From: Euprymna scolopes
Taxonomy: Eukaryota
NCBI GenBank assembly: GCA_053919585.1
Contig: CM132788.1
Length of the DNA stretch: 64,000 bases
Reading direction: 5' to 3' (one strand)
Below, piece after piece: positions 15,208-18,200 of this stretch (the first letter of the stretch is position 1; every line of letters starts with the position of its first letter). Position numbers and translations under genes: made by a program. Under the pieces are notes generated by a model. It was not told the DNA's origin, ran no database searches, and saw only the letters and a program-made list of their open reading frames with translations.

Positions 15208-18200
15208 CTGTGAAAAAAAAAAAAATCCCAATTAAAAAGAATACAAAAAGTTTTGATTATTTCTCTTCAGACTATTATCCACATAAACATTAATATTTAT
15301 ATTTCTGCGCCACTTTGCTTGATGTGCTCTTCGCAAGTGCAGTAGTAATTTACACTGATACTCTCATCACCATACTTAAGTAGGATTCTTAATATGTTGA
15401 TGTTTCTGATGTACTGATAATTTTAATGTTTATTTTTAAACAAACAGGGCTACATGGTGTCACCTATGTATTATATACAATGTAAAAGAAGTAACAAATT
15501 AATTGTTAACATTAAAAATCTTAACAGAAAAAAATAAATATTAACAATTTTCATCGTTCCAGTAATGGAAAAAAAAATTCTTTGCAATTTAATTATTTAG
15601 TATTTATTCAAATAAATATATATCACATGCATTATAAAAATAATAGCATAAGTACTAAACAAATTCAGGATTAAGACAAAGAAAATATTTTCTATTTTGT
15701 CTATTGTAACTTTTGAAATGAAGTTAGATTGGTTTATTATTTTGTTACTAGTAGGTCTATCCAGTGTTGCTTGAGATCCTAATTTTTGAAAATTATGTAG
15801 ATTAAGAAAAAAAAAAGAAAAATTCAAAGTAAAACTAAACAATCTGTAATCTAAAATCTGTAAGTTCATTTTGACACAAAATCTAAGAAAAAATAATCAT
15901 GCCCCCTGGTGAGGTTCGAACATGGCTGTCTCTATAAATGGCAATTGGCTTACAAACAATTAATACTATGGTGAATGGTATCAATTCAAAATATAAAGAA
16001 ATTCCACCCTCTCTAAGGCAACTAAAAAAAGGACAAGGAAGAGAAAAAGACTTCCTTTCTCTTTTCATCTACAAGTCTGTTGCAGGTCTTTATCAGAAAA
16101 TAATGGCATCTATCCGAAATGTCTTCTGAAATGAATAAATTATTTTTTCAAAGAAATTACATTGAAATACATTTTTTTTGTTGCTAACATGGATGAATGT
16201 TCAGCAAGAAAATTGACAACTCTGATTCAAATATTTATTTTGTAGTAAAATAGCTATTGACCACCATCATATAATTAGACACAGCATTCAGTTTTTTTTT
16301 TCTTTTTATTTGTCCGTGACCAGAACCATACATGCTGCACAAAATCAGAGGTTTGTACCAATTTTTAAGTATTATTTGCTTAAGAGTCGCGATCAGGCAT
16401 TTTAACAAAAATACTTTAAGAAACTGAAATTGATGTCCGAACAAATGAACGGCAATTTTACCCATATAATGGCCCCTAGGGAGGCGACCAGAGATCACAG
16501 AAAATCCATTTTGGCAAAAATTTACTACCACCATGACTAATTTTTGTGCAAAATTAAAAAAAAAAAAAAATTAAAAAAAAAGAAGGAGTGGTTATTGAGA
16601 AAAATGCAAACAAATAAGCAGACGAATGAGAGTAAATTACTAGGTCCAATCCCTCCTTTGTTGGGGCCCAAGAAAGTAAAATGCTGTCTTTGCTGTTTAT
16701 AGATGACCATCATAAACACAGACCTCCACAATATTCTTGAACCCCTTTTATAAAATTGAATAAATTATCAAGTTAAGCAAAGTAATAAAAATAATTATCA
16801 TTTAAATAAATAAAATGTTCTTGTTACTTACTTGTCGTACAAATTCTGCCATCATAAGTAACTTCTTAATGCCAATATGAAATCTGAAAAGCAAAATCAA
16901 AAATCAAATAAAACATTTTCTCATACTTAAATTTATTTTGTATTATTTTGATTCATCGGACAATAATTCTCATCTTGGGTGTTATTGGCACAACGTTTCG
17001 GTCGCTGTACCCTGCAGCCTTCTTCGGGTGTTGCATACATGTTTCCTTTTCCTAAGGGAAAGAGGGGTTAGCTCTGCATTGACAAAATTCAAACCATGGG
17101 TTTGAGGGTGAATTCATAGATCCTAAAAAAAAGTTCAATCTTCAAGGGTCACTAAAATATTTTTTTAAGGCTTTCCTATGACTCAATTTTTCATTTTCAA
17201 TTTTTTATCTACGCTAATTGTTAATATTAGTGAAAAAAAAGGTGCTTTTTGGAAAGGTAACTGTTTTACCTTCCTAATAAAATATATTTAAAGAACACTG
17301 CACAAAAGAGCAACAAACTTCTTTTTAACAATTTGAAATATTTATTTGTAGCAGGAACTGGCAGGTCGGACTGTGAAAAAGGAAAAAAGAACAGAAAGTT
17401 CTTTTTGAGGTCGTCGTCGGTCAGTCAGTACTGTGTCGTCACCAGCTAATAGCTGTTGTCTCCAGTGGAGGCCGTCAATGCTAAAGCAAGATGTCTGGTG
17501 GACAGGGAACAAGAGAAGAGTTGTTGCTTGTTCAGTTCTGGCTGACTGACATTCCCTCTAAACGTTTTAGGGAGCAGATGAATCAATGCACCCTGTTAGC
17601 TGATAGAGGGGAGCATTGATTCACCAGAGAAAATAGTTCTCTGTAACTGCTACAGTGTTTTACGAAACAGAGGATCGATGCCCATGTGTATTTTTATTAA
17701 AAAAAACAAAACACATACACACAATGCAAGGGAGACAACTCGAAAGGAAAAAGTTTTTTTTGTGAAGTTACCTCCCTATGTTTTTGTTATTGCTCTTTTT
17801 TCTCCTGTGAATTTGTAATTAAGGGGATCAAAATGTGATTGAATTCTATGCTGGTATGCTAATGATATTGCTATTTTTTACCATATGTGCTGCCTCTAAA
17901 TTTTCTGATTAATCAAAAGGATACAAAAATTCACATTCATTTCAAAACTTCAGAATTGCATTAAATTTATTTTGTTAGACGCAAACACCATATCTCTATA
18001 ACTATCTAATCATGTTCTTGACAGTTGGGTATATTGTTTAATATCCACAGAAACATACTGCTTCTATAATACTAATATCAAGAAATCTCCTTGTGAATAT
18101 GACAAAGACATATGCATATAGGTAGGAATAGAACATCCTCTCCTATCACCACACTGTTGTATGTCTGTGCTTGTTTACAAGTACTTTGATTAAACTAGTA

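What the first reader, a model, noticed from the sequence alone, without database searches (positions are those of the whole stretch)
17347..17654. Unclassified 308-nt multi-helix element with TG...CA ends, antisense within an NSF intron
Seen: most of the segment is paired. Closing stem TGTAGCAG (17347-54)/CTGCTACA (17647-54); hairpin 17384-92/17398-406; an 18-bp helix 17416-33/17533-50 enclosing two arms (17434-45/17495-504, with inner hairpin 17458-63/17467-72; and 17507-13/17527-33); hairpins 17552-57/17569-74, 17579-89/17613-23 (11 perfect bp plus inner stem) and 17625-31/17637-43. The six wobbles I counted are all G-U on the + strand with no A-C pairs, whereas neutrally decaying palindromes here (e.g. 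42361) show both. Established: TG...CA ends typify LTRs. I see no hallmark motif of SRP, 7SK, RNase P/MRP, telomerase RNA or a hammerhead. Inference: a structured RNA, either the LTR of a small non-autonomous retroelement or an undescribed ncRNA. Caveats: stems were chosen by eye and there is no exact TSD.
Basis: partly seen in the sequence, partly recalled or inferred. Interest (0 to 1): 0.72.

Follow-up and report, generated by a model that had tools for sequence, protein, structure and literature searches.

The report
Solo LTR of a Gypsy retrotransposon
The hairpin-rich 308-nt stretch is the larger part of a 409-nt leftover terminal repeat (solo LTR) of an old Ty3/Gypsy-type jumping gene present in at least ~80 and probably a few hundred copies in this genome; it is an ordinary decaying repeat, not a new structured RNA gene.

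Summary
The pairing is real. The unit was mis-delimited: only the right end (17654) is a terminus. The element runs 17246-17654 (409 nt) and is one copy of a dispersed ~450-nt repeat. That repeat is the LTR of a Ty3/Gypsy-type retrotransposon, with its sense strand on the window's minus strand (5'-TGTAGCAG...CCTAAA-3').

Evidence:
- Two direct copies 94% alike bracket RT-RNaseH-integrase on contig C10.
- A polypurine tract precedes the unit in several independent loci.
- A nested sister element is complete: LTR, TGG-type PBS, pol, PPT, LTR.
- Solo copies carry 4-bp target-site duplications (9/19 perfect vs 0.6% in controls).
- Six paralogous empty sites show 17246-17654 is one insertion.

The helices are inherited from the founder and are not maintained. 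Private changes break pairs symmetrically (G:T 117 vs A:C 94; 102 vs 102), with 3-6 compensatory cells in ~3000. Family-wide z is equal on both strands (-3.4). The one-sided G-U pattern follows from an element-wide G-poor sense strand. There is no Rfam or tRNA match and no discrete transcript in poly(A) RNA-seq. Verdict: ordinary solo LTR, low interest.

The parts
17246..17654 (-). Solo LTR (409 nt) of a Ty3/Gypsy-type family ('family A'). Sense reading 5'-TGTAGCAG...CCAAAAA-3'. Full-length copies are ~450 nt; this copy carries deletions of about 31, 8 and 7 nt.
   Evidence: Homology to 40+ genomic copies spans exactly this range. It is the only copy in the window. Paralogous empty sites in DNA and in reads (joints 17238-41 to 17654-60) confirm the insertion.
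17242..17245 (.). Left copy of the 4-bp target-site duplication (GTGC)
   Evidence: Matches GTGT at 17655-58 in 3 of 4 positions. The family-wide 4-bp TSD is 9/19 perfect and 16/19 with >=3/4, vs 0.6% and 5.8% in mismatched pairs. At C3:117757050-053 the two flank matches overlap by exactly 4 nt.
17655..17658 (.). Right copy of the target-site duplication (GTGT)
   Evidence: As above.
17347..17654 (-). Presumed U3 (inference). Rich in short inverted repeats.
   Evidence: Fold z -5.84 / -4.88. Stems verified. Helices are present in most copies as inherited sequence, 72-92% Watson-Crick per helix.
17579..17623 (-). Remnant of the ~75-nt hairpin that is the only helix clearly shared with sister family B. 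The 11-bp stem is kept. ~31 nt of the inner part are deleted between 17607 and 17608.
   Evidence: Alignment of copies. A-versus-B alignment shows the stem GAATCAATGC/GCATTGATTC becoming GGATCAATGC/GCATTGATCC. Reads from other copies carry the missing letters at 17604-17608 (tables 5c and 7).
17246..17346 (-). It holds AATAAA (sense; + strand 17341-46), a TATA-like TTTAAATATATT (sense; + strand 17281-92) and a terminal hairpin (17251-17274). Presumed core promoter / R / U5, by motif only.
   Evidence: Conserved among copies. Hairpin appears in both folds. U3/R/U5 borders were not mapped: no read starts or ends (table 6).
17088..17245 (.). Left part of an older dispersed repeat into which the LTR inserted
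   Evidence: >=1036 first-look candidates, 40 scored at 80-85% identity. Contiguous with the right part at six other loci.
17655..17758 (.). Right part of the same older repeat
   Evidence: 502 first-look candidates. RNA depth falls to about 0 beyond 17759.

Best explanation
Window 17246-17654 (minus strand) is a solo LTR. It is what remains after an old Ty3/Gypsy-type LTR retrotransposon inserted into an older repeat in this intron and later lost its interior and one LTR, most likely by LTR-LTR recombination. Integrase made the 4-bp target duplication. When the family was active the LTR would have supplied promoter and polyadenylation signals; the U3-R-U5 layout is inferred, not mapped. The many short inverted repeats that make it fold so well were already in the founder LTR and have since decayed neutrally. 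The copy here has no demonstrable function. Shown: repeat family, true boundaries, LTR identity, orientation, TSD, empty sites, neutral decay. Inferred: solo-LTR origin by recombination, U3/R/U5 layout, tRNA priming.
For: - Dispersed family: 40 scored copies at 78-86% identity, 79 exact matches to the 19-nt terminus vs 0 in the control, star-like ~87% pairwise identity.
- Boundaries: right end sharp; left end at 17246, not 17347.
- LTR pair on C10, 94% alike and ~10 kb apart, bracketing RT, RNase H and integrase pieces on the same strand. On C27 the order is pol, ~850 nt, then LTR.
- PPT ...AAGCAGGGGGTGA lies directly before TGTAGCAG in L008, L010, L019/21, L024 and the C46 group.
- The nested sister element is complete: LTR + AA + PBS TGGTGACCCGACGGAACG ... 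PPT + LTR, with TSD CTTC/CTTC.
- 4-bp TSD statistics.
- Six empty sites in DNA, and empty-site joints in reads.
- No second copy in the window. No same-strand pair within 12 kb among the 79 exact termini.
- Neutral decay of pairs and strand-symmetric z-scores.
Against: - The 3' end of the LTR (sense) is ...CTAAA, not the canonical ...CA. The terminal inverted repeat is only TGTAG/CTAAA.
- The single family-A 5' junction I could read has a degenerate PBS (ATAGTGACCA), and that element lacks gag. The clean PBS comes from the sister family.
- The window copy's TSD matches at only 3 of 4 positions.
- No tRNA gene matching the PBS was found.
Confidence: 0.93

Rival explanations
1. The LTR identity stands, but the helices (at least the ~75-nt hairpin near the sense 5' end of the LTR) were a functional structured module of the active element. 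Possible roles are a 3'-UTR RNA element, a small-RNA precursor or palindromic protein-binding sites. The window copy would be a dead relic of it.
For: Folding excess is a family property: mean z -3.4 over 14 copies and -2.5 in family B. The hairpin survives between families A and B with one A:T to G:C double change and a T:G to C:G change in the inner stem.
Against: Only two lineages were compared, and one compensatory change is weak evidence. Other helices are not shared: the terminal hairpin is broken in B and the ~100-nt branched insert is absent. The excess is strand-symmetric, as expected of DNA palindromes. No discrete RNA is seen.
Confidence: 0.15
2. An independent structured ncRNA gene or exapted RNA, read from the + strand at this locus.
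For: Strong + strand fold (z -5.84). All wobbles are G-U on the + strand. Reads whose first mate lies on the - strand slightly predominate over 17271-17514.
Against: The segment is not a unit: its left end is internal to a repeat. There is no Rfam hit, no read starts or ends, and most reads are <90% alike, so they come from other copies. The G-U bias matches the element-wide GC skew of -0.14 to -0.20, seen also in the coding interior, and shuffles give 17% vs 10% G-U pairs. Private mutations break pairs symmetrically. This copy has lost ~31 nt of the family's best-conserved hairpin.
Confidence: 0.02
3. A SINE on the minus strand (3' hairpin plus A-run) or a MITE with the 8-nt inverted ends.
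For: The sense 3' end is a hairpin followed by TAAA(A). An 8-nt inverted repeat lies at 17347-54 / 17647-54. Most copies are full length.
Against: No tRNA, 5S or 7SL head. The TSD is a fixed 4 bp, not variable. The unit is joined to PPT and pol in several loci and is paired on C10. The 8-nt 'TIR' partner is internal, not terminal.
Confidence: 0.01

Closest known systems
Solo LTRs of Ty3/Gypsy (Metaviridae-type) LTR retrotransposons
   Same: Direct LTR pair around RT-RNaseH-integrase (H2C2 zinc domain plus rve core), a PPT before the 3' LTR, a TGG-type PBS 2 nt after the 5' LTR (sister family), a short fixed TSD (4 bp), a 5' TG terminus, a predominance of solo copies, and empty sites.
   Different: The sense 3' terminus is ...CTAAA rather than ...CA. 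The LTR is unusually rich in short inverted repeats (z about -3.4 family-wide). The clade within Ty3/Gypsy was not determined, and the family's name in repeat libraries was not checked (no Dfam or Repbase tool).
TRIMp3 elements (Cassandra, Helenus, Ajax): non-autonomous LTR elements whose LTRs carry a 5S- or tRNA-derived module (PMC10886601)
   Same: An LTR containing a strongly folding segment. Animal Helenus also makes 4-bp TSDs, according to the abstract of PMC10886601.
   Different: No tRNA- or 5S-like sequence is detectable in the LTR (ARAGORN; Rfam). The family has a pol-coding interior, so it is not a TRIM.
Self-priming Gypsy families noted earlier in this same genome (s1-275108, s1-295548)
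   Same: Same genome, same superfamily.
   Different: Here the PBS starts with TGG and has no complement of >=8 nt in its own LTR; shuffled controls usually reach 5-7 nt. So this lineage looks conventionally primed, although the primer tRNA was not identified.

Membership tests
LTR of an LTR retrotransposon | Two direct copies flank an internal coding region and are more alike to each other than to other copies | tested here: met
   C10: copies at 6665-7107 and 16746-17189 of the merged locus are 94% alike, vs ~87% (aligned positions; 78-86% by BLAST with gaps) between copies at other loci. RT, RNase H and IN lie between them on the same strand. Only one such pair of family A was retrieved.
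LTR of an LTR retrotransposon | Polypurine tract immediately upstream of the 3' LTR | tested here: met
   ...CCTAAGCAGGGGGTGA|TGTAGCAG in L008, L010, L019/L021, L024, the C46 copies and the family-B element.
LTR of an LTR retrotransposon | Primer-binding site just downstream of the 5' LTR | tested here: inconclusive
   Sister family B: LTR + AA + TGGTGACCCGACGGAACG. The only family-A 5' junction in hand is degenerate (ATAGTGACCA). No matching tRNA gene was found.
LTR of an LTR retrotransposon | Short target-site duplication of fixed length | tested here: met
   4 bp: 9/19 perfect and 16/19 with >=3/4, vs 0.6% and 5.8% in mismatched pairs. Other lengths and offsets are at background. Family B has CTTC/CTTC.
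LTR of an LTR retrotransposon | Canonical 5'-TG...CA-3' termini | tested here: not met
   5' TG is present (TGTAGCAG). The 3' end is ...CCTAAA in most copies. This feature is common but not universal among LTR elements, so I do not treat it as excluding membership.
Ty3/Gypsy superfamily | pol order RT, RNase H, integrase, with Gypsy-type domain models | tested here: met
   Pfam RVT_1, RT_RNaseH_2 / RT_RNaseH, Integrase_H2C2 and rve in that order in family B. Collinear tblastn matches in family-A interiors on C10 and C27. No phylogenetic placement was done.
Insertion (mobile unit) at this locus | Paralogous or orthologous empty site lacking exactly the unit | tested here: met
   Six loci where the flanks abut or overlap by up to 4 nt. 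RNA and contig joints skip 412-420 nt.
Structured ncRNA gene | Base pairs kept by compensatory substitutions | tested here: not met
   3-6 double-sided changes in ~3000 pair cells. One-sided breaks: G:T 117, A:C 94, other 99.
Structured ncRNA gene | Discrete transcript with defined ends | tested here: not met
   No places where molecules begin or end. Low depth on both strands, mostly from other copies. Caveat: only poly(A) libraries, and one lay at 85% likeness.
Structured ncRNA gene | Match to a described RNA family | tested here: not met
   Rfam 15: no match in the LTR at E<=10 (window) or E<=1 (full-length copies and family B).
TRIMp3 (Cassandra/Helenus/Ajax) | tRNA- or 5S-derived sequence inside the LTR | tested here: not met
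   ARAGORN found 0 genes in 7 loci. Rfam found none.
SINE | Pol III-type head, variable-length TSD, A-rich or LINE-like tail | tested here: not met
   No head. Fixed 4-bp TSD. Linked to PPT and pol.
MITE | Terminal inverted repeats at both true ends | tested here: not met
   The 8-nt partner at 17347-54 is internal. The true ends share only TGTAG/CTAAA.

The most novel reading that the evidence does not exclude
The U3 part of this Gypsy lineage carries a conserved structured module, the ~75-nt hairpin kept between families A and B with a compensatory A:T to G:C change. It would have had a role in the element's life cycle, for example as a 3'-UTR stability or export element or as a small-RNA precursor. 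The unusual density of helices would then not be accidental.
Probability: 0.1. Interest if true: 0.4.

Novelty: new member of a known kind. Interest (0 to 1): 0.1.

Why it matters
Mostly as a clean negative. A striking multi-helix fold (z near -6) with apparent TG...CA ends and one-sided G-U wobbles turns out to be an ordinary solo LTR.

Three lessons apply to the rest of the scan:
- Test unit boundaries against other copies before folding.
- G-U-only wobbles can come from a retroelement's strand-wide base skew.
- Folding excess equal on both strands points to DNA palindromes, not to an RNA.

The family itself adds a conventionally primed Gypsy lineage to a genome where self-priming relatives were noted. 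It has a 4-bp TSD, TG...AA ends, a TGG-type PBS and a hairpin-rich LTR.

Tried and rejected
- SINE on the minus strand: my first reading, from the 3' hairpin plus A-run and apparently variable TSDs. Rejected once the PPT/pol junctions, the LTR pair and a fixed TSD appeared.
- 5-bp TSD always starting with A: my own selection artefact. Position 1 agrees in only 8/19 copies, positions 2-5 in 14-16/19.
- Truncation polarity: uninformative, because copies found with either end are mostly full length.
- RNAalifold on 31 copies gave patchy structures. The column-shuffle z (-6.3 on +, -3.5 on -) mainly reflects inherited sequence, so I relied on explicit pair counts instead.
- Self-priming PBS: no complement in the LTR.
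- Primer tRNA: 26 genome matches to the PBS complement, but none with the expected acceptor partner upstream. Left open.
- Metagenome scan for the conserved hairpin blocks: 0 hits.
Natural copies served as references.
- NSF identity and strand were not verified.

Full report
**1. The observation**

I read window 17100-17900 and folded 17347-17654 on both strands. The + strand gives -119.7 kcal/mol, z -5.84. The - strand gives -94.7 kcal/mol, z -4.88. None of 100 dinucleotide shuffles did as well on either strand. The stem 17434-45/17495-504 pairs at only 5 of 10 positions. So the pairing is real and more than chance. Rfam 15 has nothing in 16800-18200 even at E<=10.

**2. It is a repeat, and the unit is longer**

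- The 308 nt match 40 scored places in the window's own 5.9-Gb genome at 78-86% identity. There were 976 loose first-look candidates.
- Aligning copies with flanks shows the right edge (...GTAACTGCTACA, 17654) is sharp. The left edge is not: conservation continues about 100 nt upstream.
- BLAST of 14-19 kb of the window against the copies puts the left end at 17245-17247. The realignment shows the start (T)TTAGGAAAGGTAAT....
- Copies retrieved with the left 104 nt are again mostly full length, 1-449 of a natural reference copy.
- Full copies are about 450 nt. The window copy is 409 nt because of deletions, the largest being about 31 nt inside the big hairpin.
- The window holds a single copy.
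- The 19-nt terminus has 79 exact genome matches against 0 for the control. No two lie on the same strand within 12 kb. About 9 of the 21 aligned copies keep that 19-mer by my reading of the alignment. On that rough basis the family has a few hundred members, mostly isolated.

**3. What kind of repeat**

My first guess was a minus-strand SINE, from the terminal hairpin and A-run. Three things overturned it.

(a) *A shared extension.* Several copies on different chromosomes share a further extension beyond the right end: L008, L010, L019/L021, L024 and a large group on C46. Read on the minus strand, it ends in a purine tract directly before the unit...CCTAAGCAGGGGGTGA|TGTAGCAG.

(b) *An LTR pair on C10.* Two copies in the same orientation lie about 10 kb apart. 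They are 94% identical to each other, against about 87% between independent copies. Between them, on the same strand, are RT, RNase H and integrase pieces. On C27 the order is upstream ORF, RT, IN, about 850 nt, then the unit.

(c) *A complete sister element.* Inside the C10 element sits a complete relative ('family B') in the opposite orientation. It has:
- 353-nt LTRs that are 95% alike;
- the flanking duplication CTTC/CTTC;
- its 5' LTR followed by AA and then TGGTGACCCGACGGAACG, a TGG-type primer-binding site;
- its 3' LTR preceded by AAGCAGGGGGTGA.

Its ORF pieces hit Pfam RVT_1, RT_RNaseH_2 / RT_RNaseH, Integrase_H2C2 and rve in that order. Its LTR aligns with ours at both ends and over the big hairpin.

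Hence the unit is the LTR of a Ty3/Gypsy-type element. Its sense strand is the window's minus strand: 5'-TGTAGCAG...CCTTTCCTAAA-3'.

**4. Target-site duplication and empty sites**

From 19 copies with unshared flanks, I set boundaries by alignment to a natural copy. A 4-bp duplication stands out, [NNNN]TTTAGG...CTGCTACA[NNNN] in window orientation:
- 78% identity, 9/19 perfect and 16/19 with at least 3 of 4 matching;
- mismatched pairs give 27% identity, 0.6% perfect and 5.8% with at least 3 of 4;
- other lengths and offsets are at background.

An earlier impression of a 5-bp TSD beginning with A was my own selection bias. The window copy has GTGC (17242-45) and GTGT (17655-58).

Independently, the window's flanks belong to an older repeat with 1036 and 502 candidates. 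At six other loci the left-flank match ends at window position 17238-17245, and the right-flank match begins at 17655-17656 directly beside it. At C3:117757050-053 the two overlap by exactly 4 nt, as one copy of the target site predicts. RNA reads and contigs show the same joints, skipping 412-420 nt (table 5). So 17246-17654 is one insertion.

With no partner LTR in the window, it is a solo LTR. Origin by LTR-LTR recombination is the standard inference and was not shown here.

**5. Is the fold a selected RNA structure?**

- *Family-wide folding.* Fourteen independent full-length copies give a mean z of -3.44 in window + orientation and -3.35 in sense orientation. The whole window LTR gives -5.01 and -4.88. 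Family B gives -2.5 on both strands. The excess is a family trait but is strand-symmetric, as for DNA inverted repeats.
- *Pair conservation.* I took the exact pairs of the window copy's MFE fold and scored them in 30 other copies. Helices are 72-92% Watson-Crick, but through inherited sequence: only 4 double-sided changes occur in about 3000 cells.
- *Private changes.* Deviations from a commonest Watson-Crick pair are G:T 117, A:C 94 and other 99 with the + fold. With the - fold, G:T and A:C are 102 and 102. There are 3-6 compensatory cells. That is neutral decay.
GC skew is -0.16 to -0.20 in the LTRs and -0.14 to -0.16 in the coding interiors of A and B, against -0.02 to -0.07 in neighbouring window DNA. 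Shuffled + strand sequence forms 17% G-U pairs and shuffled - strand 10%. The asymmetry therefore needs no selection on a + strand RNA. A G-to-A bias during reverse transcription would produce it, but that cause is my inference.
- *Comparison with family B.* The ~75-nt hairpin near the sense 5' end persists with one A:T to G:C double change and a T:G to C:G change in the inner stem. A long central hairpin persists in simpler form. A's ~100-nt branched insert and its terminal hairpin are not shared. This is the only hint of constraint, and it rests on two lineages.

**6. Known RNA modules and expression**

ARAGORN finds no tRNA in seven loci. Rfam finds nothing in full-length copies or in family B at E<=1. 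This is therefore not a Cassandra / Helenus / Ajax-type LTR (PMC10886601).

I laid three poly(A) RNA-seq runs (raw reads) and one contig set at 85% likeness. They show about 5-20x depth over the LTR on both strands, mostly from reads under 90% alike, which means other copies. No site shows many molecules beginning or ending, and depth is near zero in the unique intron beyond 17759. There is no discrete RNA. The caveat is that only poly(A) libraries were available.

**7. Priming**

Earlier notes report self-priming Gypsy families in this genome. Here the PBS has no complement of 8 nt or more in its own LTR, while shuffles usually reach 5-7 nt. The 15-mer complementary to the PBS occurs 26 times in the genome, against 0-1 for the control. 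None has the expected acceptor partner 45-70 nt upstream, so the primer tRNA is unidentified. From memory, the first nine PBS bases equal those of tRNA-Trp-primed avian retroviruses; that is a lead, not a test.

**8. Limits**

- There was no Dfam or Repbase tool.
- NSF identity and strand were not checked. That the genome is a mollusc is taken from earlier notes and run labels.

**Verdict**

This is an ordinary, old solo LTR of a Ty3/Gypsy family. Interest is low.

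Noticed in passing
window 17088-17245 and 17655-17758: An older dispersed repeat (at least 1036 and 502 first-look candidates) is the insertion target of the LTR. 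Its type is unknown.
   Followed up: partly
window 16966-17026 and 16600-16660: Two short repeat segments have very high poly(A) RNA depth. The first reaches about 450x summed over both read directions, with many loose ends. The second reaches about 140x, almost all in one direction. Probably parts of abundant transcribed repeats.
   Followed up: no
G000 contig C46, about 153-214 Mb (loci L033-L036, L040-L044, L048-L052, L056, L058-L060): More than 20 copies of a multi-kb unit that includes one LTR copy plus both flanks, 85-99% alike. It has internal ~141-nt tandem repeats (L035 2093-2628) and a (GA)n tract. This looks like satellite-like or segmental amplification of a region that had captured an LTR.
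   Followed up: partly
L064+L067 (C10:63084000-63101499): Nested pair of related Gypsy elements in opposite orientation. The host (family A) lacks gag. The guest (family B) is complete in layout, with 353-nt LTRs, TSD CTTC, a TGG-type PBS and a PPT; its pol is in several ORF pieces.
   Followed up: yes
L064:7208-7560: Another dispersed repeat (772 first-look candidates, ~85% identity) lies about 100 nt behind the 5' LTR of the C10 element.
   Followed up: no
L039:2694-2792: Hairpin matching Rfam MIR774 at 41.7 bits (E 3e-5), below the gathering score of 80. It lies outside the LTR and is probably a chance or repeat-derived hairpin.
   Followed up: no
L065:492-2084 and 3592-4863 (minus strand); L062:2832-4920: Further, more distant Gypsy-type pol remnants (about 30-36% amino-acid identity to family B) lie near the family-A copies. 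LTR elements seem to be clustered or nested in these regions.
   Followed up: no
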